From the IMG/VR virus record IMGVR_UViG_3300025536_000010, positions 170,887-234,886 of that record: a stretch of DNA of 64,000 bases, one strand, 5' to 3'. The position numbers and the translations under genes are program-made. The notes under the pieces are model-generated. The model did no database searches, was not told the origin of the DNA, and saw only the letters and a program-made list of their open reading frames with translations. Position 1 is the stretch's first letter. Each line of letters starts with the position of its first letter. Shown piece after piece: positions 2,166 to 55,201 of the stretch.

Positions 2166-2623
2166 TGACCATTACCGAGTTGGTGATTGCGGCACTGGCG
2201 ACCTGGGAGATAATCGAGATCTGGCGGCACGGTAGTATCTTCGCCGACCGGCGGGCCTACGCCCAGGCCGAAGGCTACGGACACTTCCTACGGCGGCTGC
2301 TCGATTGCGGCTTCTGCCTGAGCCCGTGGGTCGCCTTCCTGCTCGTGCTGTGCCCGCTGACGCTGTCCCTGGCGGTCGACCCACCACGGCACTGGTTGGC
2401 TGGCTCGGTGTGGGCGTTCTTCCTGTTGTGGCGTTACGCCGTCTACGCCTTTGCCGTTGCTCGGCTCGCCAACCTCGGTAATGATCTCACGCACTCGTGG
2501 TGCCGCACACCAGACACCAAGAAGCAGATCGCCGCGCAGTTCGCGGGCGATGATTCAAAAGCCACTTTAGAGGAGAGGCCGCATGGACCAGCAACCGATG
2601 CAAACGGAGAAGACCACGTTTGA
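2162..2623 (+). CDS. Membrane protein with CxxC motif (DUF1360-like)
   Basis: LLDCGFCLSPWVA motif between hydrophobic helices. Confidence 0.6.
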   Translation: MMTITELVIAALATWEIIEIWRHGSIFADRRAYAQAEGYGHFLRRLLDCGFCLSPWVAFLLVLCPLTLSLAVDPPRHWLAGSVWAFFLLWRYAVYAFAVARLANLGNDLTHSWCRTPDTKKQIAAQFAGDDSKATLEERPHGPATDANGEDHV

Positions 2624-2999
2624 CATGGCCGTTATGGCCAAGCTCAAAAACGCCGCCGACAGCGTGTTGACCGAGCACCCAGAGGTTGACTGCGTCTGTG
2701 CGGTCGTCTCCTGGAAGGGCAACCTCAACGACGCTGGCATCAAACACGGCATCTGGGTCGGTGACCAAGGGCCAGTCGGTACGGCCGAGGGCATTTTCGG
2801 CAGCATGTACCAACTAATAAAGATGTTCGACGAGCAGGCCACGAGGGCCGTGAAATACGTCGAGCATGTCCGCGAAAAAGTTGAGGTTCTGGGAACAGAA
2901 CTGAGGAACCGCCATGAAGAACTCGAAGCGGTCAAAGCAGAAATCGCAAAGTGCAAAGCCCAAGTTCAGTCTGACGCCGGAGGAACAAAAACCACTTGA
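2583..2999 (+). CDS. Hypothetical protein with C-terminal coiled coil
   Basis: GAGGAG RBS, typical codon usage. Confidence 0.65.
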   Translation: MDQQPMQTEKTTFDMAVMAKLKNAADSVLTEHPEVDCVCAVVSWKGNLNDAGIKHGIWVGDQGPVGTAEGIFGSMYQLIKMFDEQATRAVKYVEHVREKVEVLGTELRNRHEELEAVKAEIAKCKAQVQSDAGGTKTT

Positions 3000-3564
3000 G
3001 GACTTACTCAAGGACCACGGCGTCAAGAACTGGGACTTCCTCATCGTCGGTGACGGCTCCGGGTCGAACTGGAACCGTGAGGCGGGCTGGGGCGCAGTCA
3101 GTATCGAAAAAATCACAATGGAACGTCTCGTGTGGACCGGGACGATGAACAAGGGCACGGTCAACTTCGCAGAGATGATGGCTTACCAGCAGCCACTCAG
3201 CTGGCTGGCCGCCCGCGAAGAAGATCGCCGCGCCAAGCGCGCGGTGAAGTACCGGGCCTACCAGGTCCACATCTTCACGGACAGTGACTACTGCCGGCAA
3301 ACCGGCAACAGCAAGAACCGCCTCGTGGCCAAGAACGGGGCGTTGTGGGCGGCGTTCGATAGTTACGTTCGGCAGGGCTTCGTGCTCAACTGGCACTGGA
3401 TACCGCGCGGCAGCGTGGCCCTGAACTCCTACTGTGACAGGCTGTCGAAACTGGCAAGGCTCCTGATGAAAAAGTATAATCTCCAGGAGAAGCTAGAAAC
3501 GGAACACTCCTGCGGGGGTGTACCGCGGACAGTCTACGACATCAACCCGTCCGAGGCGGGGTAG
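2914..3564 (+). CDS. rnhA: Ribonuclease HI-like protein
   Basis: IVGDGSG..AGWGAV, TVNFAEM, IFTDSDY, KNGALW, WHWIP, N..CDRLSK match the RNase HI D-E-D-D pattern. True start may be slightly downstream. Confidence 0.8.
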   Translation: MKNSKRSKQKSQSAKPKFSLTPEEQKPLEDLLKDHGVKNWDFLIVGDGSGSNWNREAGWGAVSIEKITMERLVWTGTMNKGTVNFAEMMAYQQPLSWLAAREEDRRAKRAVKYRAYQVHIFTDSDYCRQTGNSKNRLVAKNGALWAAFDSYVRQGFVLNWHWIPRGSVALNSYCDRLSKLARLLMKKYNLQEKLETEHSCGGVPRTVYDINPSEAG

Positions 3565-3572
3565 GAGGGTGC

Positions 3573-4073
3573 GTGATAATCAACGAGGGCCGATTGGAGG
3601 TGCGCTGGTATCGCCCGTCCGACATGGTACAGCTTGTTGGGCTGCATCAATGCTGCCTACCCAAGGAAGGTTGGACGAGCAAGGATTTCTGGAAGTTCGT
3701 CCATAAGGCCGGCACGACCAACATCCTCAAAGTGCTGTCCGACGACCAGGGCAAGATCGTATACGGTACGCTGCTGTACACCCTTGGCCCCGGTGAGTGC
3801 CGTCTCCGGCGTGTCTGTGTTTGGCCCGACTACCGCCGCCGCGGTCTGGGCACTTTCATGGTCCACACGACCATGACGAGCCCACGCAGTTCGCTCAAAA
3901 ACCGCAACTTCGTCGCCAAGGTCAAAGAAGCCGACGTCACGGCCCAGCTGTTTTTGCGAAAGCTGGACTTCACGTTCAACGCAAAGGAGGCGCGCGCTCA
4001 AGACGACGAAGGCAAGGACTACTATGTCTTTCGCTTCAAAAAGCCCGAGTTTGCTGCCCTAGCAACCGGGTGA
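3573..4073 (+). CDS. GNAT acetyltransferase (RimI-like)
   Basis: VWPDYRRRGLGT acetyl-CoA motif; VKEADVTAQLFLRKLDF. Confidence 0.8.
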   Translation: MIINEGRLEVRWYRPSDMVQLVGLHQCCLPKEGWTSKDFWKFVHKAGTTNILKVLSDDQGKIVYGTLLYTLGPGECRLRRVCVWPDYRRRGLGTFMVHTTMTSPRSSLKNRNFVAKVKEADVTAQLFLRKLDFTFNAKEARAQDDEGKDYYVFRFKKPEFAALATG

Positions 4074-4097
4074 CGGTATCGTTCAGACAGGTCTGTA

Positions 4098-4958: not shown

Positions 4959-4967
4959 GAGGAGCCT

Positions 4968-5390: not shown

Positions 5391-5401
5391 CGAGAGACGT
5401 C

Positions 5402-6750: not shown

Positions 6751-6785
6751 CATATAACGTGCAACAGGAGCCGTAACGAGGTACA

Positions 6786-7157: not shown

Positions 7158-7159
7158 CT

Positions 7160-7683: not shown

Positions 7684-7692
7684 AAGGAGCGT

Positions 7693-9093: not shown

Positions 9094-9288
9094 GAGGGCG
9101 AAGCCTGAGCGCGTGCGAGGCGCGCTCCCGGCGTCGGGGGCGGGAGCGCGCTGAACCTAAAAGCCATATACGAGGAGCCTGCGGCTCTGTCGCCGATGTG
9201 TTGAGGGAAGCCCGCCGTGGTTAAGCGCGACGCTCCCTTGACCCCTTAATAACTTCTTGGGCTCGCGCAGCGCAGCCCAGGAGAGATT

Positions 9289-9355
9289 TATAATAAGTAG
9301 GCTAGCTACTTAGCCTAAGATGTGCCCCAGGTATTAGGCTAACTGTTAGCCTAAT
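9289..9355 (+). promoter_or_regulatory. AT-rich region with TATAAT and two TAGGCTA-N5/6-TAGCCTA palindromes (operator or origin candidate)
   Basis: TATAAT 9289-9294; palindromes 9298-9317 and 9333-9355 (ATTAGGCTAAC-T-GTTAGCCTAAT). Confidence 0.6.
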
Positions 9356-9851: not shown

Positions 9852-10777
9852 GCTTACACGAGCACGATTTGATCTACCGCATCACCGAAGTACGCGGTGC
9901 CGAGCGGTATAACGCTCAGCGGCGGGCCGTATTGACCGGAGCGTTCCGCAGTACGGGTTGGACGCGGGAGGGCAACAAGAGCATCATCGCGTCCATGAAC
10001 TCGCTGCGCCGTCTCTGGCAGAAGCGGCTGGCCGATCTCAAAGCCGCCGCTTGGGGTCCGCTGGCCAAGGAGAGCCACCACTGTTTCATGCGGAACTGTC
10101 CGCCTTTCGGCGTGCTCACGCACAAGATCACCAGCAAGCCCTGCAAGCGCACCCGCGTCTGCCCGTTCTGCTACGCCCGGCAGACGGTCCTGGAGATGTT
10201 CCTGTTCTTCGAGCGGGAACTGTACGGCGGCACCGACCCAGCGTCGCGGGTCGCCCGTCTGGAAGGTCGGCAGCTGGTGGAGGTTCACGTTGACCGCGCC
10301 TGCGACCTGCGGCCATTTCCCGGCGAGGCGCGCGGACCCAAGATTCTCGACTACGGTCGGCGCCTGCGGGTCCGCGTCTTGAACGAGCATCGCCAGGACG
10401 AGCTGCGCCTGTGCGGGGCCAAGACCGGAGCGGTGCTCTACCGCCTGGAGCCGTTCACGAGTAAGCTACGGTTGGTCCGCAGCGGTATCCTGCTCACTTC
10501 GCAGGCGGTGCCGGATTATTTCGGCACCAAGTACGGCCCCAACGACAAGATCATCAAGTACGACCGCGTCGACAAGCACCTGCTCGCTGAGGTCGTCGGC
10601 CGCGTCTGCCGCTATCCGCGGCAGATGCTGATCGCCCCGGCCGAGGACGTCGTGGCGCTGTTGCGCGGCTTGCAGAACGCGCGCCTCCTGTCGTTCTACG
10701 GAGGCACGCCGAAACCCCAAAAGCCAGTTTTGGAGGAAGCAGACGATGGCGAAGAAGAAGGCACGGAAGAAGTCTGA
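9848..10777 (+). CDS. Hypothetical protein resembling a degenerate rolling-circle Rep (zinc motif kept, HUH absent)
   Basis: CKRTRVCPFCYAR, EVVGRVCRYP, LQNARLLSFYG; function inferred only. Confidence 0.45.
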   Translation: MSLHEHDLIYRITEVRGAERYNAQRRAVLTGAFRSTGWTREGNKSIIASMNSLRRLWQKRLADLKAAAWGPLAKESHHCFMRNCPPFGVLTHKITSKPCKRTRVCPFCYARQTVLEMFLFFERELYGGTDPASRVARLEGRQLVEVHVDRACDLRPFPGEARGPKILDYGRRLRVRVLNEHRQDELRLCGAKTGAVLYRLEPFTSKLRLVRSGILLTSQAVPDYFGTKYGPNDKIIKYDRVDKHLLAEVVGRVCRYPRQMLIAPAEDVVALLRGLQNARLLSFYGGTPKPQKPVLEEADDGEEEGTEEV

Positions 10778-18390: not shown

Positions 18391-18609
18391 GTGACTCCTG
18401 TGCGAGTAAAATGTCGCAGTGGTTTGGCGCTGACGATCCCGTGCCACCACACAGTCTTTACGCCGGTCGGTGATTACCAGGAGGGTGATGTTGTCGACCC
18501 CACTACGGTAGATTTCGAGGCCGACCGTGCTCCGGTCGTCCTGGAGCCCGGCCGGCGCATCATCGTCGACAATAAGGTAGAGGTCGTCGAGACAGTTCGG
18601 ACGGCCTGA
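18391..18609 (+). CDS. Hypothetical protein
   Basis: Fills the gap; start uncertain. Confidence 0.5.
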   Translation: MTPVRVKCRSGLALTIPCHHTVFTPVGDYQEGDVVDPTTVDFEADRAPVVLEPGRRIIVDNKVEVVETVRTA

Positions 18610-18634
18610 TGGCTAAAAGCCACTTTTGAGAACT

Positions 18635-20104: not shown

Positions 20105-20404
20105 GTGGAGCGCAAGTTCAGCGAGTTCCACCAGACCGTCCACGTCTGCGTGCCGCGCCGCGGATTCGGTGGGCCGAGCAGCCCAGGCACGAGCATCTTC
20201 GTCACGGTCAACCGTGACAAGGACTTTTTGCGGCGGCGCGACACGGAGAACCCCAAATGGGGGAAGGCAACCGTCAATTGGTGCGCCTGCGGCAACACCG
20301 ACCGGAAGACGGCGTTCCTGATGACACGCGCACTCAACCTCGCCATCTTCATCGCGCAGGCGATGGACAACGGCGAGTTCGACAAGGAGAAGCTCAATGG
20401 CTAA
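20105..20404 (+). CDS. Hypothetical protein
   Basis: Packing; start uncertain. Confidence 0.55.
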   Translation: MERKFSEFHQTVHVCVPRRGFGGPSSPGTSIFVTVNRDKDFLRRRDTENPKWGKATVNWCACGNTDRKTAFLMTRALNLAIFIAQAMDNGEFDKEKLNG

Positions 20405-20957
20405 GAACAAGTTTTTGGTTGAACGTATCGAGCACCTCGAAGCGGTCGCGGAGGAGAATGAGGTGCTGCGCGGGCAACTCCAGGAGTTGGCCGAGAACTT
20501 GAACGTCGGCGCGGAGAAGGTCGAAGCGCTGGAGGAGGCGACCCGGTCGCTCAAGATGCGCTTGGATGACCTGACCGAGCAGCACGAGGAACTGGTGCTG
20601 TCTATTCACGGCAACGCCAAGAAAGAAAAGCCGTATACATGGGAGGACGAAGACGAAGACCCTGGCGAGAATCGGACCTATCTCGACGAGGATGAGGACG
20701 AAGACTCGGACGAAATCGCTGACGAAGACTCGGACGAGGATGAGCCCGAGCACTACATTATCGTGAACCCATGCAAGCCCGGCACCAAGGGCTTCACCAC
20801 TTACTTCCAGGGTCTTCGGCTGGGTGAGGAGCGCTGGACTCGCAATATGGACTCGGCCAAGCGCTACTACGACGAGGCGGAAGCGGAGGCGCAGAGGAAG
20901 CGCCTTCTCAAGAAGAACGGCAAGAGGCTCGAACTCCAGCCCGGCTACGGAGACTGA
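20397..20957 (+). CDS. Coiled-coil/acidic hypothetical protein
   Basis: AAGGAG RBS. Confidence 0.65.
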   Translation: MAKNKFLVERIEHLEAVAEENEVLRGQLQELAENLNVGAEKVEALEEATRSLKMRLDDLTEQHEELVLSIHGNAKKEKPYTWEDEDEDPGENRTYLDEDEDEDSDEIADEDSDEDEPEHYIIVNPCKPGTKGFTTYFQGLRLGEERWTRNMDSAKRYYDEAEAEAQRKRLLKKNGKRLELQPGYGD

Positions 20958-24672: not shown

Positions 24673-24795
24673 CTGCCAACTAGACGTGCCTCCATAGCGG
24701 TGACGGCTTGTTCCGGTGTGCTGGTGGAACCATAAGCCTGTTCTAACTATACCCCGCCGCCACCCCAGTTTCAACTCTATTCCAGTTTTTGGAGT
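24663..24795 (+). ncRNA. Candidate structured RNA between the RAMP and helicase genes
   Basis: Perfect 10-bp stem GCACGTCTAG/CTAGACGTGC (24663-24689); second bulged stem ATAG..ACGGCTT-GTTCC/GGAAC..AAGCC.GT..CTAT (about 24694-24750). Confidence 0.35.
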
Positions 24796-24804: not shown

Positions 24805-26373
24805 ATGCGCAAGAAGATCACCGTCCTGCGGACGGATGACAAGATCGTCGTCGAACCGACCACGCGCCGCGTACGAGCGCTGATCGAGCAAGACCTCACC
24901 TACATCGAAAAGAGCTTCTTTCACGGCTACGAGCGCAAGAAGCGGCTCAAACACGGCCTGCCGCCTTTCGAGGAAATCGAGTGGCAGTGTTACGGTGAGG
25001 ATCACAAGGGCAGGCTCTCCACGTCCTGGGGCTTCTGCGAGCGCATCGTGGACCTGCTGGAGAAGGACGGCTACCCGGTCGAGGTGCGCTGGGCTACCAA
25101 GGGCAACCAGGAGGAGGCTGCGCAGCGCGCCGAGACGGTCTACAAGCCTCGCTGGGACCGCATCGAGCAGCTGGAAGCGGATGGCTTCAAGTTCCGCTAC
25201 AAACAGCGGAAGGCCCTCAATCTAATAGCCACTTTTGAGAACGGCCGCATCTCGTGCCCCCCTGCCTGGGGCAAGGGCACCCTTATCATGCTGGCCAGTG
25301 TCCTCTTCCCCAAGGCCAAGATTGCCGTGGTCACCGACCGCGTCGACGTTCTCCAGACCCGGCTCTATCCCGAACTGGCCATGAATCTACCCTCGGTAGG
25401 TATCGTGGGTGGGGGCATGCGCCGCAAGGGTCGGCGAGTCATGTGCTACACCGCAGACAGCCTGCACCACTGCCCGAACGACGTGGACTTTGTGTTCGTG
25501 GACGAGGGCCACGAGGCGTGTGCCGACAAGTTCGCGGAGTCGATGGGCAAGTTCAGTAAAGCCAGGATCTGGATGTTCTCGGCAACCTGGGATATGCGCC
25601 TGGACAACAAGGACATCCGTGCCGAGGCGATGGCTGGCAAGATCCGCCTGCACGTCCCGTACCAGAAGGCCGTCGAACACGGCATGGTCGTCCCAGTCGA
25701 GGTCATCTGGGACGACGTCATCATGGACGAAAACCCGTGCTCGGGTCTGGACGGCGTGGACAAGGATCGGGCTGGCATCTGGGCCAACGACTATCGCAAC
25801 AAGCTGATCGCCAAGAACAGCGGCCTGTACGGCCCGGAGGTCCAGGAACTTATCACCTGCAAGACGCTCGAACACGCTCTGCACCTCAAAAAGATTTTGC
25901 CGGGTCACGTCCTGGTCTACTCAGGACAGCAACTCAAGGACCGGGACATCCGCTGGTTTCGTGACTGCGGCCTCATCGACGACACCTGGCGGCCGATGAC
26001 GATGGAGAAGCGTAAGCGGCTGACCAAACGCTTCGAGCGCGGTAAGCTCAAGAAGGCCATCGCCACCACGGTTTGGAACGTGGGTGTGAACTTCAAGCAG
26101 CTGGCCGTCGTCAACCGGGCGGACGCGGGCGGTTCGCCGATCAACGACACACAGATCCCTGGACGCGGCGCGCGTATCGACGACGTCTCGGGTAAGAAGA
26201 AGCTCTGTGCCATCATCCACGATTACAAGGACCAGTTCGACACAGGCACGCGGATGAAAGCCGAGCGCCGAGGAAAGTCTTATGACGCCAACGAGTGGCG
26301 TCAGCATCACCCAAAGAAGGAGAAGCGGTCGCTGTTGCGGCAGCTGATGGAATGGGGGAACCCACTCAAATGA
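24805..26373 (+). CDS. Superfamily 2 (DExH) helicase
   Basis: CPPAWGKGT, VDEGH, SAT, IATTVWNVGVN, QIPGRGAR. Confidence 0.9.
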   Translation: MRKKITVLRTDDKIVVEPTTRRVRALIEQDLTYIEKSFFHGYERKKRLKHGLPPFEEIEWQCYGEDHKGRLSTSWGFCERIVDLLEKDGYPVEVRWATKGNQEEAAQRAETVYKPRWDRIEQLEADGFKFRYKQRKALNLIATFENGRISCPPAWGKGTLIMLASVLFPKAKIAVVTDRVDVLQTRLYPELAMNLPSVGIVGGGMRRKGRRVMCYTADSLHHCPNDVDFVFVDEGHEACADKFAESMGKFSKARIWMFSATWDMRLDNKDIRAEAMAGKIRLHVPYQKAVEHGMVVPVEVIWDDVIMDENPCSGLDGVDKDRAGIWANDYRNKLIAKNSGLYGPEVQELITCKTLEHALHLKKILPGHVLVYSGQQLKDRDIRWFRDCGLIDDTWRPMTMEKRKRLTKRFERGKLKKAIATTVWNVGVNFKQLAVVNRADAGGSPINDTQIPGRGARIDDVSGKKKLCAIIHDYKDQFDTGTRMKAERRGKSYDANEWRQHHPKKEKRSLLRQLMEWGNPLK

Positions 26374-29988: not shown

Positions 29989-32900
29989 ATGGACGGAGAG
30001 AAAAAGAAAGCCAAACTGCGCCGGCGCATCCGCATGCTGGAAAGAGAGGAGCGCAAAAAGCATAAGCGGCTGCTCAACGCGGTAGTCGGCAAGTCTGGCA
30101 TGTGGCCTTTGAACGCCCCGGGGATGCCTCCCCCGGGGCCTGATTTTCTCAGGGTCGCTCAGGGCCTGGGCGATCAGACGGAATACGCCAAGCAAACCAA
30201 GACGAGGGAGGGCGTCTATAAGCCTGGCGACAAACTGGAGGAACTGTACCGGCGGGCGCTGCGCGAGGTCGGCTTCTCCATCGACGTCAAAATCCGCGAG
30301 GGCACCTATGGTCCGGTGACGTTCGTGCCTGGACACATCTGGGGCCAGTATTCGGAAGAGTGGCAGCGGTCGATCCTGGAGCCTAACTACGAGCCCCCCA
30401 AGATCGACGGCCCCCACCCGGCCGAAGTGTTTGTCCTGGGTAAGATGCCCTGGCGCGAAGAGACAATCGAGGGCCGTAACCTGATCGGGGCTACCGGCGA
30501 AATCCTCATCGACCTGATCGCTAAGCTGCGCGTCCGCGGTGCGCAGAAATGGTACGTCAGCAATCTTGTGAAGTTCATGCCGCCCGACGACACCAGCGTC
30601 CTCAAAGCGGGCTGGATACACGATTGCATGCCGCTCCTGCATCAGGAACTGCGGATCGTGCGGCCCAAGTACATTCTCTGCCTGGGCGCGGACGCCTCGA
30701 AGTGGCTGCTCGGCGACAAGTTCAACGTCAGCTACATGGCGGGGCGCGTCGTCCCCTATACCTACCCTATCCATTTGACGTACGACCACGAGCCTGAACA
30801 CCACACGGCGCACGTCATGACGGTGTTGCACCCTGCGGAAGTCTCCCGCGAGCCCGCCAAGGCCCGCATCCTGGAGAGCAACTTCCGGCGCTTCGCGTAC
30901 CTGATCGAGGGCCACAACCTCGACATTGAGGAACAGGGACTGGACCACAGGGTCTGCAACACGCTCGAAGACGCCGAGGAGTGGGTGCAGGAGGTCAACG
31001 CCTACTTCGCCGACAAGCCGAAGCGCTTACGGCTCGTGGGGATCGACGCCGAATGGCAGGGGCAGCACCCGATCAACAAGGGTAGCTACGTCCGCACGAT
31101 CCAGATCGCGTGGGACGAGAAAAAGTCGATGTGCTTCGTGATCTCGCACCCGGGCGGCAAATGCGCGTTTCGGGACCGAGACGGCAAACCGGCGGTCAAG
31201 CGCCTGGTCAGGCTGCTCAACGAGTTCATGGAGGACAAGCGTGCTTGCGGCCACTTCTTTGTCTCTGACTTGGAGTGGCTGCATCATCTGGGGTTCGATC
31301 CAATCAAGCACTGTCCGGTGCCGCTCTACCCGAACAAGAAAGGCAAGCTGGCCTGGGAGCGGCTGCGGAACGGTGAAGGTTGGCTCGACAGCGCCTACAT
31401 GAACCACGCTGTCGAGGAGACGGCACCGCTGGGGTTGGAAATGCTGACGATGCGCTACACTAGCGCACCGCGGTACGACATTGCACTCGAAGATGCCGTG
31501 AAGGAGTATTGCAAGAAACAAGGCATCAAGCGCGAGGCTCTGGAGGGCTACGGCGATATACCGGACAAGGTGCTGGTGCCGTACGCCAACTACGATGCCG
31601 ACGTGACGCTGCGCATCGTCAAGAACTTGCTGGAACTTCTCGACTCGGACTACGAAGGCAACTGCGCCTGGGAGCCGTTCTGGGAGTCGATGATTATCCA
31701 AAAACCGATTTTGAGAATCCACAAGAACGGCATCTGTGTCGACCGTGGCCGCGTGGACGATCTCACCAAAAAGTTCGTCACGGCGCGTTACGCCCAGGAA
31801 GAGAAGATCCAGACCTGGGCGCGCTGGACGGAGACGGAAGAGTGCGCGGCGTTCAACGTCCGCTCGAACCAGCAGGTTCGTGAGTTCCTGTTCGGCGAGA
31901 AGTACAACGGCAAGCGGGACGAGCGCGGCAAGCCGATCCGCCTGCGCCCCGAGGGTGCGCGCTGTTTGAATCTGGAACCGTTGCTGGACACCAGCAAACC
32001 GCCTCGGCGGTGGAAAGACCTCAAGGAGCGTGGTCTGGACCGCGATGCCACGCCTGGCACTGGCAAGATGATCCTGGGCATCATGGCGCAGGAGAATCTG
32101 AACGTGGCGGACCAGATCAACATGGTCCGCGACTATCGGTTCCTGGATCAGGTTTTGAAGTCGATCCTGCGGCACCCCAAAGTGGACGAGGACGACCACT
32201 GGATCGAGAACGAGGACGGCTTTTTGGAGTACGAAGCAGGCTTGGCCGCTTGCATCGACAACGACGGTCGGGTGCGTACGCACATCTACCCGACAGCGGA
32301 AACGGGTCGGTGGAAACACTCCCGGCCGAACCTAGCTAACATCAGCAAGAGCCGCGACCCCGACTACGTCCGCATGCTGGGCGGCGAGAAGGTGAACGGC
32401 AAATGGGTCGGCGGGCTGTACACGCACAAGCTGCGCAGCGTCCTCAAAGCTGCCCCCGGGTACTGTCTTATCGAGTTCGACTACAAGGGCGCCGAACTAT
32501 ACGGTATGTCCTTGATGGCTGGCTCGAAGAAGATGATGGAGCACTGCGAGCGCGCTAACACCTACGAGGAGGAGGGCTACAGCCGGAAGGGCAAGAAAGC
32601 CAAACCGGATCACAAATGCAAGGACGGCAAAAAGGGCTGCGAGTTGTGCGGCTACCCGTCGCCGGAATACTACGACATCCACTCGAACGTCGCCAAGCTG
32701 GCGTTCCAGCTGGAGTGTCACCCGAGCAAGTTCGGCCTGGATCAGATCGGCAAATCGCACTTCCGCACGCTGGCGAAGAATGTGATCTTCGGCATCGCCT
32801 ACGGTCGTGGGGCCAAAGCCATCGCGCTCCAGGCCAAGGAGCAGGGCGTCAACGTCACCGTCGAGCAGGCCCAGATGGTCATCGACGCCATTTTCGAGAT

Positions 32901-33381
32901 GTACCCGGAGTTGGTCCCGTTCTTCGACGAGGCCAAGCAGCGAGCGCTCAACGAGAAGTGGTTATGCCACTGCTTCGGTCGCTACCGGCGCTTTCCCACG
33001 ACTTCGGACTACAAGATGGAGGGTGAGTTCGAGCGGCAGGCGATGAACTTCCCGATCCAGGGCATGATCGCGTCCGCTGTGGATCGCGGCCTGGCTTTCC
33101 TGGACGACAAGATTGACGAGCTTGGCCTCCAGGACGATATTCGTCTGTTGTTGCAGATGCACGACGCCGGCCTGGTGGAGTGCAAGTACGAATTGGTCCC
33201 GTACGCCAAGAAGCTCATCAACTGGGCGATGGTCGACATGGTCGAGATCTGGCCTACGGATCTGGCCGGAGAAATGCGCGGCGACGGTCCCTACCACCTG
33301 GGCCTGGACTTCGCCGTCGAGCAGCACTGGGGCGAGAAGATCCCCAAGGACAAGTACGCTGAACTAGGAATCCCGGTATGA
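29989..33381 (+). CDS. polA: Family A DNA polymerase with N-terminal uracil-DNA-glycosylase-like domain and 3'-5' exonuclease
   Basis: UDG-like block (LGKMP..G..G, SNLVKF.P, HPA); IDAE, YANYDAD exonuclease motifs; TGRW..SRPNLANI; DYKGAEL; RTLAKNVIFGIAYG; QMHD. Confidence 0.93.
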   Translation: MDGEKKKAKLRRRIRMLEREERKKHKRLLNAVVGKSGMWPLNAPGMPPPGPDFLRVAQGLGDQTEYAKQTKTREGVYKPGDKLEELYRRALREVGFSIDVKIREGTYGPVTFVPGHIWGQYSEEWQRSILEPNYEPPKIDGPHPAEVFVLGKMPWREETIEGRNLIGATGEILIDLIAKLRVRGAQKWYVSNLVKFMPPDDTSVLKAGWIHDCMPLLHQELRIVRPKYILCLGADASKWLLGDKFNVSYMAGRVVPYTYPIHLTYDHEPEHHTAHVMTVLHPAEVSREPAKARILESNFRRFAYLIEGHNLDIEEQGLDHRVCNTLEDAEEWVQEVNAYFADKPKRLRLVGIDAEWQGQHPINKGSYVRTIQIAWDEKKSMCFVISHPGGKCAFRDRDGKPAVKRLVRLLNEFMEDKRACGHFFVSDLEWLHHLGFDPIKHCPVPLYPNKKGKLAWERLRNGEGWLDSAYMNHAVEETAPLGLEMLTMRYTSAPRYDIALEDAVKEYCKKQGIKREALEGYGDIPDKVLVPYANYDADVTLRIVKNLLELLDSDYEGNCAWEPFWESMIIQKPILRIHKNGICVDRGRVDDLTKKFVTARYAQEEKIQTWARWTETEECAAFNVRSNQQVREFLFGEKYNGKRDERGKPIRLRPEGARCLNLEPLLDTSKPPRRWKDLKERGLDRDATPGTGKMILGIMAQENLNVADQINMVRDYRFLDQVLKSILRHPKVDEDDHWIENEDGFLEYEAGLAACIDNDGRVRTHIYPTAETGRWKHSRPNLANISKSRDPDYVRMLGGEKVNGKWVGGLYTHKLRSVLKAAPGYCLIEFDYKGAELYGMSLMAGSKKMMEHCERANTYEEEGYSRKGKKAKPDHKCKDGKKGCELCGYPSPEYYDIHSNVAKLAFQLECHPSKFGLDQIGKSHFRTLAKNVIFGIAYGRGAKAIALQAKEQGVNVTVEQAQMVIDAIFEMYPELVPFFDEAKQRALNEKWLCHCFGRYRRFPTTSDYKMEGEFERQAMNFPIQGMIASAVDRGLAFLDDKIDELGLQDDIRLLLQMHDAGLVECKYELVPYAKKLINWAMVDMVEIWPTDLAGEMRGDGPYHLGLDFAVEQHWGEKIPKDKYAELGIPV

Positions 33382-39101: not shown

Positions 39102-39223
39102 CGCTGGGAGACGTTCTCCCAAAAACTGGTTTTTAGACATGGCCCAGAAGGGCAGGGCGTGGTACGCTTACCTCAAGAGGTGGCAGACACGCACCAACAC
39201 TCACGACGAAGGAGACAACAAGA

Positions 39224-40177
39224 ATGTCCGACAACACCACCGCCGTAGCCCCCATCGACAAGAAGCGTCTGGCCATCTTCAAGGACATGACGGAGGCCAC
39301 CCAGGAAGTCGCCCGCGATTTCGAGGGCAAGCTCTCCAAGGGCGCGACCGGCTTGGTCATGATCCAGTACGACGTCGGTTCGCGGCTGGCCGACATCATC
39401 GCCGACGAGGGGACGTACGGTGCCGGTGCCGTCAAGCAGCTGTCTCTCTACCTGGGCATCCCCGGCGGCGAGACGACCCTCTACAACCTGCGGAATTTCG
39501 CGCAGGAGTTCGATAAGGAGTTCGTGCGCCAGTGGACCTCGAAGTCGATGGCCGGCGGCGGTCACCTGGCGATGGCGCACTGGTTCCAGATCATGAAGCT
39601 CAAGAGCAAGGAGAAGCAGGAGAAGCTCTTGAACCGCACGCTCAAGGAATCCTGGAGCGCCAACGACCTGGAAAAGGAAGTCCGCGCCGGCAGCGGCGGC
39701 AAGACCAAGAACGTCCGTGGCGGCGGGCGTAAGCCACAGACGCCGACGAGCCCGATGGCCGGGCTCCAGAAAGCGTTCTCGGTGGCTCAGCAGCTGAACA
39801 GGCTGGAGCCGGTGCTGCTGGAGTCGGTCTTCGACAAGATTGACTCCCTCGAACCGGACAAGGTGACGGACACCTTGCTGGAGAAGCTGGAGACGACCCG
39901 CGATCAGGTGGCGGAAACCCAGGAGACGTCGGGCGAAATGCTGACGCACCTGGAGAAGAACATCAAGCGCGTCACCAAGATCCTCGAAAAGCAGAAGGCT
40001 GCCGCCGAGGAAGCGGGCGACGAGGACGAAGATGCGGGCGAAGAGGCGCCCAAGAAGAAAAAGAAGAAGCCCGCCTCGGCGTCGAGCAACGGCAAGGCCG
40101 AGTCCAACGGCCACGTCGACGGCGCCAAGAAGAAGAAAAAGAAGAAGAAGCTCCGCCCGGTTGCGGCCGAGGCGTAA
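39224..40177 (+). CDS. DNA-binding protein with a DUF1016(YhcG)-N-like domain and poly-Lys tail
   Basis: YG.GAV.QLS..L...G...L.N.R.FA..F; L..AH...I; WS..DLE; KKKKKKKK. Confidence 0.6.
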   Translation: MSDNTTAVAPIDKKRLAIFKDMTEATQEVARDFEGKLSKGATGLVMIQYDVGSRLADIIADEGTYGAGAVKQLSLYLGIPGGETTLYNLRNFAQEFDKEFVRQWTSKSMAGGGHLAMAHWFQIMKLKSKEKQEKLLNRTLKESWSANDLEKEVRAGSGGKTKNVRGGGRKPQTPTSPMAGLQKAFSVAQQLNRLEPVLLESVFDKIDSLEPDKVTDTLLEKLETTRDQVAETQETSGEMLTHLEKNIKRVTKILEKQKAAAEEAGDEDEDAGEEAPKKKKKKPASASSNGKAESNGHVDGAKKKKKKKKLRPVAAEA

Positions 40178-44816: not shown

Positions 44817-45605
44817 ATGCCTCAGAAAACTGTCCCGGTGTCTTTCTTGAAGGATCATCCGCGGCAGCGTGAAGTGTTTGGGGTGCCGTCTCCAGAAGAA
44901 ATCGAGAGGCTGGCTGCCTCGATCAACCGTCGCGGCCTGGACTACCCGCTAGAGATACTGCCAGACGGCACCATCATCAAGGGACATCGCAGGCGTCTTG
45001 CTGCGCAGTCGCTGGGTTGGAAAGACGTCCCGGTCAAGATACTGCACGAACTTGCCGACGATCCGGTAGCCGCGTCTAGGTTGTTTCTGAGCGACAACTT
45101 TGACAGGCAGCAGCTTACGCCTTTGCGGCGGGCTAAGTGTATCGTGTCTCTCATGGAGTTGGAGATCGGCAAGTTAGTCGAGCGGTTCAACGCCAATAAG
45201 AAAGAGCAACTCAAAGAGAGCGTGGCGAAGCAACTGCACACCAGCCGGCGGACAGTGGATCGTTACTTGCTGGCTCTGCGGACCCCGTTCGAGGTCCAGG
45301 AGGCGTTCGACCGTAACAAGCTCAGCCTGGTCCAGGTCGGTAAAATCGCCATGATGTCGAAGGCTGTTCAAAACGCTATCGCGGCTCGGCTCGCGCTTGG
45401 CGAACCTCCGCGGGTTGTCTACGCAGATACGGTGGAGGACACGTCGCCATACAAGGCTATCGCGTCGTTGTTGGTTGCCGTGAACAAGGCCAGGGACGTA
45501 ATCGGCGACCAGGTGCTGGACAATGCTAAGTTGCAAAAGTACCGTGGCCGCCTTCGGGTGGCCAGGGGCTACATCGACGGACTCATCAAAGGTCAAGCGT
45601 GTTAG
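44817..45605 (+). CDS. ParB-like N-terminal domain plus HTH protein
   Basis: LAASI..RGL..PL.I....IIKGHRRR.AA..LG; DN..RQQLTP; VAKQL..SRRTVDRYL. Confidence 0.85.
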   Translation: MPQKTVPVSFLKDHPRQREVFGVPSPEEIERLAASINRRGLDYPLEILPDGTIIKGHRRRLAAQSLGWKDVPVKILHELADDPVAASRLFLSDNFDRQQLTPLRRAKCIVSLMELEIGKLVERFNANKKEQLKESVAKQLHTSRRTVDRYLLALRTPFEVQEAFDRNKLSLVQVGKIAMMSKAVQNAIAARLALGEPPRVVYADTVEDTSPYKAIASLLVAVNKARDVIGDQVLDNAKLQKYRGRLRVARGYIDGLIKGQAC

Positions 45606-49251: not shown

Positions 49252-49257
49252 ACTCTC

Positions 49258-49453: not shown

Positions 49454-49487
49454 CCCAAAACTGCTGAACCCTGTAAGCTGGTCCAAG

Positions 49488-49521: not shown

Positions 49522-49543
49522 ACCCAAGCAAGAAAGGATAGAC

Positions 49544-49861: not shown

Positions 49862-49862
49862 C

Positions 49863-51354: not shown

Positions 51355-51425
51355 CGTCGCGTTAGAAAGAGGGGCTCTGGTAGAATAGCCCAAGAACGGT
51401 GTTTCTGTCCCAAGGAGGTTTGACC

Positions 51426-51644: not shown

Positions 51645-51738
51645 GCAACAGACGGATGCCAACCCGTTGTTCCTCGCCCCGGCGCCCAGCCGGGGCGGGT
51701 TCTCTAAACCACTTTTTAGATTTCACGGAGTAGCCGTC

Positions 51739-52410: not shown

Positions 52411-52612
52411 CCGCACCTTGCTCATAGTCGCCGTGTCTGTCGTCTTGTTTTTTGGGCTGCGCCTGCTGGTAATGACCGTGCTGCTGACCCTGGCCAAACG
52501 CGGCAGGCCGCTCCGGTGTCCACACTGCTTGACGGTGCTGCGGCGCACGCCCTGCCTGACCCTGACCATGTGCAGTCAGTGCGGTCGTGTCTACGAGGTT
52601 GAACACCGATGA
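52388..52612 (+). CDS. Small membrane protein with zinc ribbon
   Basis: One hydrophobic helix; CPHC...CSQCG. Confidence 0.55.
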   Translation: MNQSLLDSRTLLIVAVSVVLFFGLRLLVMTVLLTLAKRGRPLRCPHCLTVLRRTPCLTLTMCSQCGRVYEVEHR

Positions 52613-53478: not shown

Positions 53479-53481
53479 TAC

Positions 53482-54252
53482 ATGAGCCTGTTCTATTCGG
53501 ACTTTTGGGGCTCGGCTCGCTCGCGGGCCAAGGCCGCCGCCGCCAGCGGTGTGCAACGTGCAAAAAAGAAATCTGGAAAGGCGAAGGCTACCGTCTCGTC
53601 GACGGCCTCGCCTACCACCAAGCCTGCGCCCCGAAACAAGCAACCGGACCCGCTGGAGGTGGTGGCGTGGTTCGTGGCCCATGTCCAGGCCCGTGACACG
53701 CCGATTTACCTGGGCATCGACCCAGGCGCCACGGGCGCGATTGGGATGCTGTGCGGCAAGCTGTACGCGGTCGTCGACATCCCCGTCTACCGGGTGAAGG
53801 TCAAACGTGTCCGGCACAACAACAAGAAGATCCGTGCTTTGACGGGCCGGAAAACCCGGACGGTCGACGGCTCGACGAGCAAGTTCGACTTTCCGGCAAT
53901 CTGTCGGCTGTTTCGCTTGTTCAAGCCGATCAAGAAAAAACTCATCGTCGTCCTCGAAGAGATTCCGCCGACGATGGGCAAGCGCGCACGCAAATACGTT
54001 GAGATCATGGTGAACCGCGCCTACGCGATCTGGCCGCTGTTTCTCTGCTCGAAAGGCTACACGGTCAAAGAGATCAAGCCTTCGGACTGGAAGAAGCGGA
54101 TGGACCTGTACGGCAAGGACAAGGAGGCGTCTCGCCGGCTAGCGCTCAAGATCTTCCCGATGGCGAACATCCAACGCAAGGAAGACACTGATCGGGCCGA
54201 GGCGCTGCTGATAGCTGAATGCGTACGAAGGATACATAATGGCAAAGCGTAA
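53482..54252 (+). CDS. RuvC-like Holliday junction resolvase
   Basis: LGIDPGATGAIG, VLEE, P..WKK, DRAEALLIA. Confidence 0.85.
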   Translation: MSLFYSDFWGSARSRAKAAAASGVQRAKKKSGKAKATVSSTASPTTKPAPRNKQPDPLEVVAWFVAHVQARDTPIYLGIDPGATGAIGMLCGKLYAVVDIPVYRVKVKRVRHNNKKIRALTGRKTRTVDGSTSKFDFPAICRLFRLFKPIKKKLIVVLEEIPPTMGKRARKYVEIMVNRAYAIWPLFLCSKGYTVKEIKPSDWKKRMDLYGKDKEASRRLALKIFPMANIQRKEDTDRAEALLIAECVRRIHNGKA

Positions 54253-55081
54253 ACCCGCCGACCATGTGCAGTTCGCTCAGTACGGCGATTGCGTCAAACT
54301 GTTCCAGGCGTCGACGAAAAAGTACGACCTCATCGTCGCCGACCCGCCGTACAACTTCGGGATGCCGTACGAGGCATACGACGACAACAAGTCCTACGAA
54401 GCCTACATGAAGTGGACCGATCAGTGGCTCGGGGCCGCCCTGAGCCGTCTTGCGCCGCACGGTAGCATGTTCATTTTCGTGCCCGACGAATGGGTCACGG
54501 AGATCGACTACAAATGCACGCATCACTACCAGCTGTACAAGCGGCGGCACATCCTCTGGGCTTTCACCTTCGGGCAGAAGGCTCACCGCAACTTCACGAG
54601 AAGCCACTGCCACATTCTCTACTACACCAAGACCAAGACGCGGTTCACGTTCAACGAGGACGCGGTCAAGGTGCCGTCGGCGCGGCAGCTGGTGTACAAC
54701 GACCCCAGGGCCGCCAAAGGCGGCAAACCGCCCGACGCGACCTGGATGCTGCTCAAGGAGCAGTTGGAGCCGTACATGACGCCGGACACAGACACCTGGC
54801 TCGTATCCAGGATCTGTGGTACTTACAAGGAACGCGAAAAGCACAGCCCGAACCAGATCCCGGTGCCGATCACCGCCAGGATCGTGCGAGCGTGTTCCAA
54901 CCCAGGTGACTGGGTTTGTGATCCGTTTTGCGGCACCGGCAGCAGCGGCGTGGCCTGTGCCGGCAACAGCAGGAACTGGGACGGTTTCGACGTGGGCAGG
55001 AACTGCGTCAAACAGTCGCAGCGACGGATCAACGAGGTAAGGAAACTCAATGGACTCGGCAAACTCGCAGCGCTCGTCTGA
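54239..55081 (+). CDS. DNA N6-adenine/N4-cytosine methyltransferase (beta class), orphan
   Basis: DPPY precedes DPFCGTGS. Confidence 0.9.
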   Translation: MAKRKPADHVQFAQYGDCVKLFQASTKKYDLIVADPPYNFGMPYEAYDDNKSYEAYMKWTDQWLGAALSRLAPHGSMFIFVPDEWVTEIDYKCTHHYQLYKRRHILWAFTFGQKAHRNFTRSHCHILYYTKTKTRFTFNEDAVKVPSARQLVYNDPRAAKGGKPPDATWMLLKEQLEPYMTPDTDTWLVSRICGTYKEREKHSPNQIPVPITARIVRACSNPGDWVCDPFCGTGSSGVACAGNSRNWDGFDVGRNCVKQSQRRINEVRKLNGLGKLAALV

Positions 55082-55178
55082 GCCGGCTACCGCCGGGGCC
55101 GCACTGCTGATTTGCGCTATCCTAGCGATGGGCGTGCTTATCACCGTGGCCGCGTTGGTCATAGTGGCCCTGTTGTAA
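55050..55178 (+). CDS. 42-aa single-helix membrane peptide
   Basis: AAGGA RBS; MDSANSQRSSEPATAGAALLICAILAMGVLITVAALVIVALL. Confidence 0.55.
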   Translation: MDSANSQRSSEPATAGAALLICAILAMGVLITVAALVIVALL

Positions 55179-55201
55179 AAAGTGGCTTTTGGGGACGCAT
55201 C

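What the first reader, a model, noticed from the sequence alone, without database searches (positions are those of the whole stretch)
2555..55192. Dispersed 17-bp quasi-palindrome YYAAAA-RCCAS-TTTTDR, roughly every 6.5-8 kb over the first 39 kb
Copies: 2555 TCAAAAGCCACTTTAGA; 10717 CCAAAAGCCAGTTTTGG; 18613 CTAAAAGCCACTTTTGA; 25222 CTAATAGCCACTTTTGA; 31698 CCAAAAACCGATTTTGA; 39120-39136 (minus) CTAAAAACCAGTTTTTG; 51702 CTCTAAACCACTTTTTA; 55176-55192 (minus) CCAAAAGCCACTTTTTA; weaker at 24775 and 9157. It is AT-rich in a GC-rich genome. Most copies lie just upstream of gene starts. Two sit inside the helicase and polA genes and use otherwise rare codons (CTA ATA; TTG AGA), which suggests selection on the DNA sequence. 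It occurs in both orientations. Inference: a binding site for a dimeric phage protein, such as a parS/matS-like organising site, a stoperator-like repressor site or a packaging signal. The ParB-like (44817) and DUF1016-N-like (39224) proteins are candidate binders.
Basis: partly seen in the sequence, partly recalled or inferred. Interest (0 to 1): 0.72.

Follow-up and report, generated by a model that had tools for sequence, protein, structure and literature searches.

The report
Evenly spaced palindromic sites, jumbo phage
A 235-kb phage that encodes its own RNA polymerase carries about 36 copies of a 17-base near-palindrome at unusually even 6.5-kb intervals; related phages keep the same positions but each has its own version, so it is most likely the docking site of a phage-encoded dimeric DNA-binding protein, and its exact role is unknown.

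Summary
The window has 10 matches at ≤2 mismatches against 0.1 expected. The whole 234,886-bp phage genome has 36 sites: about 24 fill short intergenic spacers and about 12 lie inside genes.

- **Selection on DNA.** In-gene copies are about 20-fold over a synonymous-codon shuffle and use rare codons.
- **Spacing.** It is far more even than random (CV 0.45 vs 0.96, P<5e-5). This repeats in relatives (G004: 34 sites, CV 0.34).
- **Relatives.** Related ~200-kb phages that also encode an RNA polymerase (RNAP) carry the same element with lineage-specific cores (AACGTT, ACCGGT, AGTACT). Sites fall at orthologous positions, even inside coding sequence (SKSTFW / LKNVFW / LKTGFW).
- **Not RNA.** There is no consistent RNA hairpin and no arm covariation.
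- **Not an ordinary promoter.** No -35/-10 pair accompanies the motif. A separate, strand-specific TAnAAT promoter class exists.

I read it as the DNA site of a phage-encoded dimeric protein. It most likely marks or controls transcription units of the phage RNAP (~0.4). The main rivals are a roadblock operator and an architectural or loading site.

The ParB-like candidate fails because it is absent from all five relatives searched. A 70-aa GerE/LuxR-type helix-turn-helix (HTH) protein is a better candidate. The closest precedent is the unexplained 17-bp dyad repeats of Cluster O mycobacteriophages.

The parts
2555..2571 (+). Palindrome copy TCAAAAGCCACTTTAGA (1 mismatch). It lies 11 nt upstream of ATG 2583 (ORF 2583-2999, preceded by GGAGAGG) and inside the 3' end of ORF 2162-2623.
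10717..10733 (+). Perfect copy CCAAAAGCCAGTTTTGG, 12 nt upstream of ATG 10746.
18613..18629 (+). Perfect copy CTAAAAGCCACTTTTGA. It lies between a stop at 18609 and ATG 18635 (SbcD/Mre11-like phosphoesterase). The G002 orthologue also has a site upstream.
20401..20417 (+). Weak 2-mismatch hit CTAAGAACAAGTTTTTG in the first codons of ORF 20397-20957. It may be a chance match.
24775..24791 (+). Degenerate copy (centre and right arm kept), 13 nt upstream of the helicase ATG at 24805.
25222..25238 (+). Copy inside the SF2 helicase gene (24805-26373), built from rare codons CTA ATA .. ACT TTT. The amino acids here (LNLIATFEN) differ from G002 and G003.
31698..31714 (+). Copy inside polA (29989-33381). 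The peptide IQKPILRI is the same as in G002, but this phage uses CAA AAA .. TTG AGA where G002 uses CAG AAG .. CTC CGA.
39120..39136 (-). Perfect copy with its centre reversed. It is intergenic, 87 nt upstream of the DUF1016_N gene. The G002 and G004 orthologues also have a site upstream.
51702..51718 (+). Copy CTCTAAACCACTTTTTA directly after a strong hairpin and 20 nt upstream of GTG 51739. The G002 orthologue also has a site upstream.
55176..55192 (-). Perfect copy with its centre reversed, 9 nt upstream of ATG 55202. The G003 orthologue also has a site upstream.
9157..9173 (+). Half-site CTAAAAGCCATATACGA (left arm and centre only), after a GC-rich hairpin and about 130 nt upstream of TATAAT at 9289.
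51672..51701 (+). Terminator-like GC hairpin (-26 kcal/mol) that abuts the 51702 copy. It ends the small unit driven by TAGAAT at 51381. Coordinates are approximate.
51381..51386 (+). TAGAAT, a -10-like hexamer of the separate promoter class. The other intergenic ones in the window are at 9289, 24104, 33875 and 61185. All nine TADAAT hexamers in the window are on the + strand.
39224..40177 (+). Gene for a DUF1016_N plus weak HTH_ParB protein. It is conserved in G002, G003 and G004.
44817..45605 (+). Gene for a ParB_N-like protein (25 bits, below the 26.3 cut-off). It is not conserved in relatives and is rejected as the family-wide binder.

Best explanation
The motif is this phage's version of a 17-24-bp dyad-symmetric DNA element with the form YTMAAAA, a 4-6-bp core, then TTTTKAR. 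A clade of ~200-235-kb phages that encode their own RNA polymerase carries it in 15-36 copies per genome.

It acts as double-stranded DNA. It is the recognition site of a phage-encoded, sequence-specific protein that binds as a dimer. That protein has co-evolved with all its sites, so each lineage has its own core.

My preferred mechanism is that protein-bound sites define and control the transcription units of the phage's own beta/beta'/sigma RNA polymerase. They would act as a promoter-operator or restart signal for the middle or late operons. They are kept at most ~12 kb apart along a genome whose genes nearly all point one way, and they are written into coding sequence where no spacer is available.

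The best binder candidate is the 70-aa GerE/LuxR-type HTH protein at G000:51313-51525, outside the window.

**Shown:** the element, its enrichment, DNA-level selection, even spacing, positional conservation with lineage-specific cores, and the phage RNAP and sigma genes.

**Inferred:** that a dimer binds, which protein binds, and the link to transcription.
For: **DNA site for a dimer**
- Relatives have near-perfect palindromes: about 24 copies of TTCTAAAAAACGTTTTTTAGAA in G002 and 34 copies of GATCYCAAAA(A)CCGGTTTT(T)GAGATC in G004.
- The slightly asymmetric centre occurs in both orientations, about 2:1, in G000 and in G004.
- The eight window copies give weak, mutually inconsistent RNA folds. 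Arm complementarity within a site is no better than for re-paired arms.

**Selection and co-evolution**
- In-CDS hits number 15 against 0.69 in codon shuffles.
- At one alignment column of gene 106, three genomes each encode their own core: TCC AAA TCC ACT TTT TGG, CTA AAA AAC GTT TTT TGG and CTC AAA ACC GGT TTT TGG.
- Sites fall at orthologous genes far more often than chance: 12 vs 1.9 expected, 6 vs 0.8 and 8 vs 2.0.

**Link to transcription**
- The phage encodes RNAP beta (PF00562, 4e-53), the N-terminal part of beta' (PF00623) and a sigma factor (Sigma70_r3, 1.8e-9).
- It is the only enriched upstream word apart from the Shine-Dalgarno sequence.
- At 5-6 G000 sites a -17 to -28 kcal/mol hairpin directly precedes the motif, and nothing but motif and Shine-Dalgarno sequence lies before the next gene.
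- Three times the order is TAnAAT promoter, small gene, terminator, palindrome, operon.
- A conserved in-gene site lies 2.9 kb upstream of the major-capsid gene, whose operon ends in a strong terminator.

**Binder candidate**
- The GerE domain scores 3.5e-16. It is present in all four relatives that are ≥90% complete.
- The recognition-helix residues are KTYANR in G000 and RTYAAR in G006, which share the GCCAG core. They are KSYTSR, RSYVNR and KLHLAR in the genomes with other cores.
Against: - **No RNA data.** No transcription start has been seen, and no RNA run holds this phage or G004.
- **Symmetry and orientation.** A dyad-symmetric element used in both orientations is odd for a directional promoter.
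- **Distance to the start codon.** The motif ends only 0-25 nt before start codons. A class II activator geometry is therefore impossible, and any start site would have to lie inside the element.
- **Sites followed by a hairpin.** Two G000 sites (39967 and 109670 in genome coordinates) and one G004 site are followed at once by a terminator-like hairpin.
- **Sites downstream of a promoter.** In four genomes a site lies about 20-30 nt downstream of a TAnAAT hexamer, that is, in a 5' leader. That fits an operator or roadblock better than a promoter.
- **Even spacing.** By my recollection this is not a property of T7 promoters. It fits a range-limited architectural role at least as well.
- **The GerE-like gene.** It was not found in G003, which is 84% complete. 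No site lies directly upstream of it. The helix-core match rests on five genomes.
Confidence: 0.4

Rival explanations
1. Roadblock or operator sites. A phage regulator bound at the palindromes blocks or gates elongating RNA polymerase. This separates early, promoter-proximal genes from downstream operons. It works like stoperators but is symmetric, and it serves timing in a lytic cycle rather than prophage silencing.
For: - TAnAAT promoters lie unusually close upstream of palindromes (median 1.1 kb, P=0.006).
- In G000, G002, G003 and G004 a site lies about 20-30 nt downstream of such a hexamer, in the leader.
- Sites often abut terminators.
- Symmetry and both orientations are natural for a roadblock.
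- Dispersed and intragenic sites resemble the stoperator distribution described in PMC4351075.
Against: - No integrase was found, so there is no sign of lysogeny.
- If the sites only block, the genes behind terminator-plus-palindrome junctions have no visible promoter.
- Only about 11 intergenic TAnAAT promoters exist for 235 kb.
Confidence: 0.2
2. Architectural or loading sites unrelated to initiation. Evenly spaced docking points serve a protein that bridges, spreads or slides, in the manner of ParB/KorB, Noc or MatP. It would fold, insulate or coat the 235-kb genome in ~6.5-kb domains for replication, supercoil management, protection or packaging.
For: - Even spacing is highly significant in four genomes: CV 0.45, 0.465, 0.34 and 0.44 against ~0.95 for random placement.
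- New sites are written into long genes (polA, helicase) where they fill what would be a ~20-kb gap.
- In long spacers the site may hug either the upstream stop or the downstream start.
- One third of sites are intragenic.
Against: - No ParB_N protein occurs in the relatives, and no other spreading protein has been identified.
- The recurrent order of terminator, site and gene start, and the link with the promoter class, point to transcription.
- Intergenic enrichment is about 10-fold over the 6% non-coding fraction. Coding constraint alone could produce this, though.
Confidence: 0.2
3. Binding sites for a host global regulator that the phage exploits, as CtrA boxes are exploited in alphaproteobacterial phages. 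The lineage-specific cores would then reflect different hosts.
For: - There is precedent for host-regulator sites in phage intergenic regions (abstract of PMC9437464, seen).
- The relatives range from 50 to 69% GC, so their hosts probably differ.
Against: - A conserved phage-encoded GerE-type HTH protein exists, and its recognition helix tracks the core.
- The cores differ between otherwise syntenic phages.
- The host is unknown, so this could not be tested.
Confidence: 0.07
4. An RNA-level signal in the polycistronic mRNA, such as a hairpin, an RNase E or RNase III processing site, or an AU-rich translation enhancer or re-initiation spacer.
For: - The element sits just upstream of start codons.
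- Several genes with a site 0-5 nt before the ATG lack a Shine-Dalgarno sequence.
- The G004 and G002 versions could form 10-bp AU-rich stems.
Against: - G000 copies fold weakly and inconsistently: -0.6 to -7.4 kcal/mol, z-scores +1.2 to -2.0.
- There is no covariation between arms.
- Both orientations occur, which changes the RNA sequence.
- Perfect loop-less palindromes and conserved mid-gene sites do not fit.
- There is no Rfam match.
Confidence: 0.05

Closest known systems
17-bp dyad-symmetric repeats of Cluster O mycobacteriophages (Corndog group), TGTTCGGNNNCCGAACA (PMC4351075)
   Same: - It has more than 30 copies per genome.
- It is 17 bp long with dyad symmetry and an asymmetric centre found in both orientations.
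- Many copies lie in short intergenic gaps and about one third lie inside genes.
- The phage is not obviously temperate and also carries a ParB-like domain protein that the authors judged irrelevant.
- Most sites are not associated with SigA-type promoters, which exist separately.
- The authors predict a dimeric binder, and the function is unknown.
   Different: - The sequence, phage group and genome size differ (70-kb siphoviruses of Actinobacteria against 200-235-kb phages that encode an RNA polymerase).
- The Cluster O sites crowd toward one genome end, whereas these are evenly spaced.
- Here the divergent relatives show concerted change of the core with positions retained, which the closely related Cluster O genomes could not show.
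18-bp inverted repeats of Microbacterium Cluster EG phages, GATCAACCNNGGTTGATC (PMC7302621)
   Same: It is a short inverted repeat in small intergenic gaps, 14-22 bp upstream of start codons. It stays conserved while the surrounding DNA diverges. Its function is unknown.
   Different: There are only 8-10 copies, confined to one genome end. None is reported inside genes, and no spacing regularity is reported.
Stoperators of Cluster A mycobacteriophages
   Same: There are dozens of dispersed sites for one phage-encoded DNA-binding protein. Many lie in short intergenic gaps, and specificity is lineage-specific.
   Different: Stoperators are asymmetric 13-mers oriented with transcription. They serve prophage silencing (as summarised in PMC4351075). 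The element here is symmetric and occurs in both orientations, and no integrase was found.
Promoter sets of T7-like phages (T7, T3, SP6); from my own knowledge
   Same: One compact 17-23-bp signal is repeated through a genome transcribed in one direction. Positions are conserved between relatives, while the sequence co-evolves with the phage's own polymerase specificity.
   Different: T7-type promoters are asymmetric and strictly oriented. They are read by a single-subunit polymerase and, by my recollection of the T7 map, are not evenly spaced.
KorB operators (OB) of plasmid RK2 and ParB-parS systems; from my own knowledge
   Same: A palindromic site is dispersed over a replicon every few kb. 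Some copies are near promoters and some are far away. A dimer that acts at a distance binds them.
   Different: The binder is a ParB-family protein, which the relatives lack. The OB and parS sequences have T-rich left arms and A-rich right arms, the reverse of this element.

Membership tests
parS / ParB partition or condensation site | A conserved ParB-family protein (ParB_N plus HTH) is encoded with the sites. | tested here: not met
   The window protein at 44817-45605 scores 25 bits against a cut-off of 26.3. There is no ParB_N match in any of the 5 relatives searched.
parS / ParB partition or condensation site | A 16-bp palindrome of the TGTTNCACGTGAAACA type, in a few copies clustered near an origin or par locus. 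| tested here: not met
   The sequence is A-tract, core, T-tract. The 36 copies are evenly dispersed. The parS consensus is from my own knowledge.
Stoperator (Cluster A mycobacteriophage type) | An asymmetric site oriented with the direction of transcription. | tested here: not met
   The element is dyad-symmetric. The centre occurs in both orientations, about 24 to 12, on a one-strand genome.
Stoperator (Cluster A mycobacteriophage type) | A temperate phage with an immunity repressor and an integrase or partition system. | tested here: not met
   There is no PF00589 match in the complete genome. Serine recombinases were not searched.
Cluster O-type dispersed dyad repeats (a descriptive class) | At least 30 copies of a ~17-bp dyad-symmetric repeat throughout the genome, part intergenic and about one third intragenic. 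| tested here: met
   There are 36 sites, about 24 intergenic and about 12 intragenic. G004 has 34 sites, 28 of them intergenic.
Cluster O-type dispersed dyad repeats (a descriptive class) | The same repeat sequence (TGTTCGGNNNCCGAACA), which would indicate homology. | tested here: not met
   The sequence is different. The similarity is one of organisation, not of descent.
Sigma-70-type promoter | -35 and -10 hexamers about 17 bp apart, in a fixed orientation. | tested here: not met
   The logo shows no conserved positions from -32 to -10 upstream of the motif. The arms are 5 bp apart. A separate TAnAAT class occurs 17 times on the + strand and 0 times on the - strand.
Intrinsic terminator or structured RNA element | A stable GC-rich hairpin (followed by a U-run) conserved by covariation. 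| tested here: not met
   Minimum free energies are -0.6 to -7.4 kcal/mol with inconsistent pairings. There is no excess arm complementarity and no Rfam hit.
Operator of a GerE/LuxR-type HTH dimer | A conserved stand-alone GerE-domain protein whose recognition helix co-varies with the site. | tested here: inconclusive
   The protein is present in G000, G002, G004, G005 and G006 but was not found in the 84%-complete G003. The helix TYA goes with the GCCAG core in two genomes and differs in three others, so n = 5. Binding itself cannot be tested with these tools.
Packaging (pac/cos) signal | One or a few sites near the terminase genes or the genome ends. | tested here: not met
   There are 34-36 dispersed copies, including in G004, which has terminal repeats.

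The most novel reading that the evidence does not exclude
The even ~6.5-kb spacing is itself the selected trait. The palindromes would be loading or anchoring points for a phage protein that partitions a 235-kb, one-direction genome into about 35 units of limited length. These units could be topological or insulating domains. Alternatively, the sites could be a new dyad-symmetric promoter class for a phage multisubunit RNA polymerase. In both cases the binder's specificity and all ~35 sites, including those inside coding sequence, would have changed in concert in each lineage.
Probability: 0.2. Interest if true: 0.8.

Novelty: new variant of a known kind. Interest (0 to 1): 0.62.

Why it matters
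Dispersed dyad repeats of unknown function have been noted in a few actinobacteriophage clusters and never explained.

This clade offers an unusually informative case for three reasons. Uncultured ~200-kb phages that encode their own RNA polymerase and sigma factor all carry the element. Each lineage rewrote the core at about 15-36 sites while keeping their positions, even by changing amino acids. The spacing is held even.

That gives a direct handle on several questions:
- how such phages organise transcription or fold their genomes;
- a natural set of matched protein-site specificities to test, namely GerE-like helix variants against core variants;
- a simple genomic signature, evenly spaced lineage-specific palindromes, for finding the same logic in other large phages.

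If the sites prove to be promoters, they would be a new promoter architecture for phage multisubunit RNA polymerases.

Tried and rejected
- **Exact-motif scan of IMG/VR**. It found only 12 single-copy contigs, which is chance level, so no close relative shares the identical motif.
- **DNA search against cultured phages**. There was no match. PolA is only about 22% identical to T5-like and Bacillus phage PolA.
- **RNA evidence.** No RNA run holds the window or G004; the only hits were 'related protein' runs.
- **Complex prediction** with two copies of the GerE-like protein plus the 18613 site. The job was not folded and gave no verdict, so it is not evidence either way.
- **Arm covariation test**. 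It found no excess complementarity. Anchoring on the A and T runs shifts the register, so I use it only as absence of support for a hairpin.
- **The word CACGGAGG.** It first looked like a second motif and proved to be an extended Shine-Dalgarno context.
- **De novo k-mer search in 21-kb loci of more distant relatives**. The loci are too short to show their motifs.
- **Hypotheses considered and dropped:** DnaA box, sigma-54, an ECF -35 element (GGAAC), UP element, IHF site, Fis site and CtrA box. None fits the geometry, or it does not hold across lineages. These comparisons are from memory only.
- **Strict periodicity.** The spacing is even but not periodic; gaps range from 0.9 to 12.6 kb.
- **Gene calls.** They come from my own crude codon-usage caller. 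Individual starts may be wrong. Some 'far from a start' sites may precede small genes that it missed.

Full report
**1. The observation**

The pattern YYAAAARCCASTTTTDR has 10 matches at ≤2 mismatches in the window. Dinucleotide-preserving shuffles give 0.10. An extra weak hit lies at 20401. The 'weaker' copies at 24775 and 9157 are half-sites.

The window is the last 64 kb of a 234,886-bp virus record with 62% GC. My own gene caller places 267 of 271 genes on the + strand. Genome-wide there are 24 hits at ≤1 mismatch, against none for the backwards-read control. At ≤2 mismatches there are 36 sites.

**2. Anatomy**

- About 24 sites lie in intergenic spacers that they almost fill. The stop codon of the upstream gene is often the TAA inside CTAAAA. 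The start codon follows 0-25 nt after the T-tract, usually with a Shine-Dalgarno sequence in between.
- About 12 sites lie inside genes, always in a stop-free frame that reads x-K-x-x-F.
- The slightly asymmetric centre (GCCAS or STGGC) occurs in both orientations, about 24 to 12, although transcription runs one way.
- The logo shows no conserved positions further upstream, so there is no -35/-10 partner.
- Apart from the Shine-Dalgarno sequence, this is the only enriched word upstream of genes.
Codons in the in-gene copies have a mean relative synonymous frequency of 0.19-0.36, against 0.51 genome-wide.
- Shuffling synonymous codons within each gene gives 0.69±0.81 in-CDS hits, against 15 observed.

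**3. Spacing**

Gaps between the 36 sites have a CV of 0.45. The largest gap is 12.6 kb. Random placement, or random choice among gene starts, gives a CV of 0.96-0.97 and a largest gap of ~27 kb (P<5e-5). The sites are evenly dispersed but not strictly periodic.

**4. Relatives**

No cultured phage is close. PolA and the N-terminal part of RNA polymerase beta' recover a clade of uncultured ~180-225-kb phages. With about 110-130 reciprocal best hits per genome pair at 41-54% identity, four of them (including G000) are syntenic.

Each relative carries the same kind of element with its own core.

| Genome | Size, GC | Element | Copies | Spacing |
|---|---|---|---|---|
| G000 (this phage) | 235 kb, 62% | CTAAAAGCCASTTTTGA | 36 | CV 0.45, P<5e-5 |
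| G002 | 219 kb, 50% | TTCTAAAAAACGTTTTTTAGAA | ~24 | CV 0.465, P~1e-4 |
| G003 | 183 kb (84% complete), 66% | CTAAAAAACGGATTTTRG | ~9 | CV 0.37, P~0.01 |
| G004 | 224 kb, terminal repeats, 69% | GATCYCAAAA(A)CCGGTTTT(T)GAGATC | 34 (28 intergenic) | CV 0.34, P<5e-5; gaps 3.3-12.5 kb |
| G005 | 202 kb | AAAAAGTACTTTTT | ~15 | CV 0.44, P=0.001 |
| G006 | 208 kb | CTAGAWKCCAGTTTCTAG | ~13 | not significant (strict pattern) |

Sites lie at orthologous places far more often than chance. G000 shares 12 with G002 against 1.9 expected, 6 with G003 against 0.8, and 8 with G004 against 2.0.

The clearest case is inside gene 106. At one alignment column the three genomes encode SKSTFW, LKNVFW and LKTGFW. 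Each lineage's own core is written into the two middle codons.

In polA the peptide IQKPILRI is identical in G000 and G002. G000 spells it CAA AAA CCG ATT TTG AGA, which forms the motif. The more AT-rich G002 uses CAG AAG CCG ATT CTC CGA.

The element is therefore selected as nucleic acid. Its positions are old. Its sequence has changed in concert within each lineage.

**5. DNA or RNA**

- The eight window copies fold weakly and differently from one another. Minimum free energies are -0.6 to -7.4 kcal/mol and z-scores run from +1.2 to -2.0.
- Nothing in the window matches Rfam.
- The two arms of a site are no more complementary than arms re-paired between sites.
- Both orientations occur.
- In relatives the element is a loop-less perfect palindrome.

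**6. Genomic context**

The phage encodes a multisubunit RNA polymerase. Beta matches PF00562 at 4e-53. The N-terminal part of beta' matches PF00623. The sigma factor matches Sigma70_r3 at 1.8e-9.

The nearest cultured relative by the beta subunit is Salmonella phage Arash, at 30% identity. Beta, beta' and a sigma factor were detected in Arash virions (PMC10585845).

A second signal class exists. TA[ATG]AAT occurs 17 times on the + strand and never on the - strand. Eleven of these are intergenic, usually with G at -14. In the window all nine are on the + strand. These look like ordinary extended -10 promoters.

They lie unusually close upstream of palindromes, at a median of 1.1 kb (P=0.006). 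Three times the order is promoter, one small gene, a -26 to -28 kcal/mol hairpin, palindrome, operon. The window copy at 51702 is one of these cases.

At 5-6 G000 sites a strong hairpin directly precedes the palindrome. Nothing but the palindrome and a Shine-Dalgarno sequence then stands before the next gene. At two sites a hairpin follows the palindrome instead.

The window itself is the replication and recombination module. It holds SbcD-like and SbcC-like genes, an SF2 helicase, PolA with UDG-like and exonuclease domains, and a DNA ligase. No integrase was found.

**7. Who binds**

- **ParB_N-like protein.** It is sub-threshold. The domain is absent from all five relatives searched, at least four of which carry a version of the element. 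I reject it as the conserved binder.
- **DUF1016_N protein (39224-40177).** It is conserved and has a site upstream in G000, G002 and G004. It remains possible.
- **GerE/LuxR HTH protein.** This 70-aa stand-alone protein lies outside the window (G000:51313-51525, PF00196 at 3.5e-16). It is present in all four relatives that are ≥90% complete and was not found in the 84%-complete G003. Its recognition helix reads KTYANR in G000 and RTYAAR in G006, the two genomes with the GCCAG core. It reads KSYTSR, RSYVNR and KLHLAR in the three with other cores. This rests on five genomes and is suggestive only.

A complex prediction with DNA was not folded.

**8. Mechanism**

What is shown:
- a DNA-level, dyad-symmetric element;
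- concerted evolution of its core within each lineage;
- conserved positions across relatives;
- even spacing;
- a phage that has its own transcription machinery.

I infer that a phage-encoded dimer binds it.

My preferred reading, at about 0.4, is that the bound sites mark and control the transcription units of the phage polymerase. They would act as promoter-operator or restart signals. They are kept no more than ~12 kb apart on a one-direction genome and are written into genes where no spacer is available.

Evidence for this reading:
- the junctions where a terminator is followed by the palindrome and then a gene start;
- the self-contained cassettes of promoter, small gene and terminator that precede palindrome-led operons;
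- the conserved in-gene site 2.9 kb ahead of the major-capsid gene.

Evidence against it:
- the symmetry and the use of both orientations;
- sites that lie in leaders about 20-30 nt downstream of a TAnAAT hexamer;
- sites that are followed by hairpins;
- the complete lack of RNA data.

A roadblock or gate model (0.2) and an architectural or loading-site model (0.2) explain the symmetry and the spacing at least as well. They leave some operons without a visible promoter, or lack a candidate spreading protein. A host regulator (0.07) and an RNA-level role (0.05) are less likely.

**9. Comparison with known systems**

The closest precedent is the 17-bp dyad repeat of Cluster O mycobacteriophages. 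It has more than 30 copies, about one third inside genes, a centre in both orientations and separate SigA promoters. Its function is unknown (PMC4351075). A further precedent is the 18-bp inverted repeat of Microbacterium Cluster EG phages (PMC7302621).

None of the motif strings occurs in a relevant paper of the held library.

The element fails the membership tests for parS, stoperators, sigma-70 promoters, terminators and pac sites. It is a new variant of a known but unexplained kind. Three things are added here: even spacing, conserved positions with lineage-specific cores (including recoded proteins), and the setting in phages that encode their own RNA polymerase.

**10. Verdict**

- Novelty: new variant of a known kind.
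- Interest: about 0.6.

Noticed in passing
window 9289, 24104, 33875, 51381, 61185 (intergenic); also 3475, 4583, 18407, 45341: TA[ATG]AAT hexamers occur only on the + strand: 9 to 0 in the window and 17 to 0 in the genome. Eleven are intergenic and usually have G at -14. They look like a separate class of extended -10 promoters.
   Followed up: partly
window 1742, 51724, 57199, 63127; about 20 more places in G000; also in G002 and G003: The word CACGGAGG lies 12-18 nt before the start codon of about 20 genes and recurs at orthologous genes in relatives. It extends the Shine-Dalgarno sequence with CAC, which the usual anti-Shine-Dalgarno pairing does not explain.
   Followed up: partly
L126:11510-12290 (G005:151510-152290); single repeats at G005:124156 and 136044: The related phage contig G005 carries a CRISPR-like array: about 10 copies of a ~36-bp repeat (GTCTCATCTTCTAAACCGATGAGCAGGTATTACGAT) at a ~72-bp period, plus two isolated repeats.
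   Followed up: no
L048:6967-13787 (G000:66967-73787): The RNAP beta gene ends with a weak intein-splicing match. A 637-aa ORF with no orthologue in G002 or G003 then sits between beta and beta'. The G003 beta orthologue is 1684 aa. This suggests intein or homing-endonuclease insertions in the polymerase genes.
   Followed up: no
window 29989-33381: PolA carries an N-terminal uracil-DNA-glycosylase-superfamily domain (PF03167, 4e-14) ahead of the 3'-5' exonuclease and polymerase domains.
   Followed up: no
L052:1510-2502 (G000:141510-142502) and its orthologues in G002, G003 and G004: A 330-aa protein gene of unknown function is preceded in all four genomes by the palindrome only 0-5 nt before its ATG, with no Shine-Dalgarno sequence. 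In G000, four of the five such sites with 0-5 nt spacing have the centre reversed.
   Followed up: partly
G002 site at 200804 in my gene-oriented coordinates (upstream of the orthologue of G000 gene 130): At this one orthologous position G002 has AAAAAGTGGATTTTGG, which is the G000-type core, instead of its own AAAAAACGTTTTTT. It may be a relic or a second specificity.
   Followed up: no
L047:98-895; L049:15977-19897; L052:2513-5809; L045-L047 in general: The genome also encodes a caspase-like peptidase (C14, 5.5e-23), two collagen-repeat tail-fibre-like proteins, and a run of glycosyltransferases and a sulfotransferase.
   Followed up: no
G004, all 34 sites: The outer arms of the G004 palindrome are GATC on both sides (GATC..AAAACCGGTTTT..GATC). 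GATC is a Dam-type methylation site, and this feature is not seen in G000.
   Followed up: no
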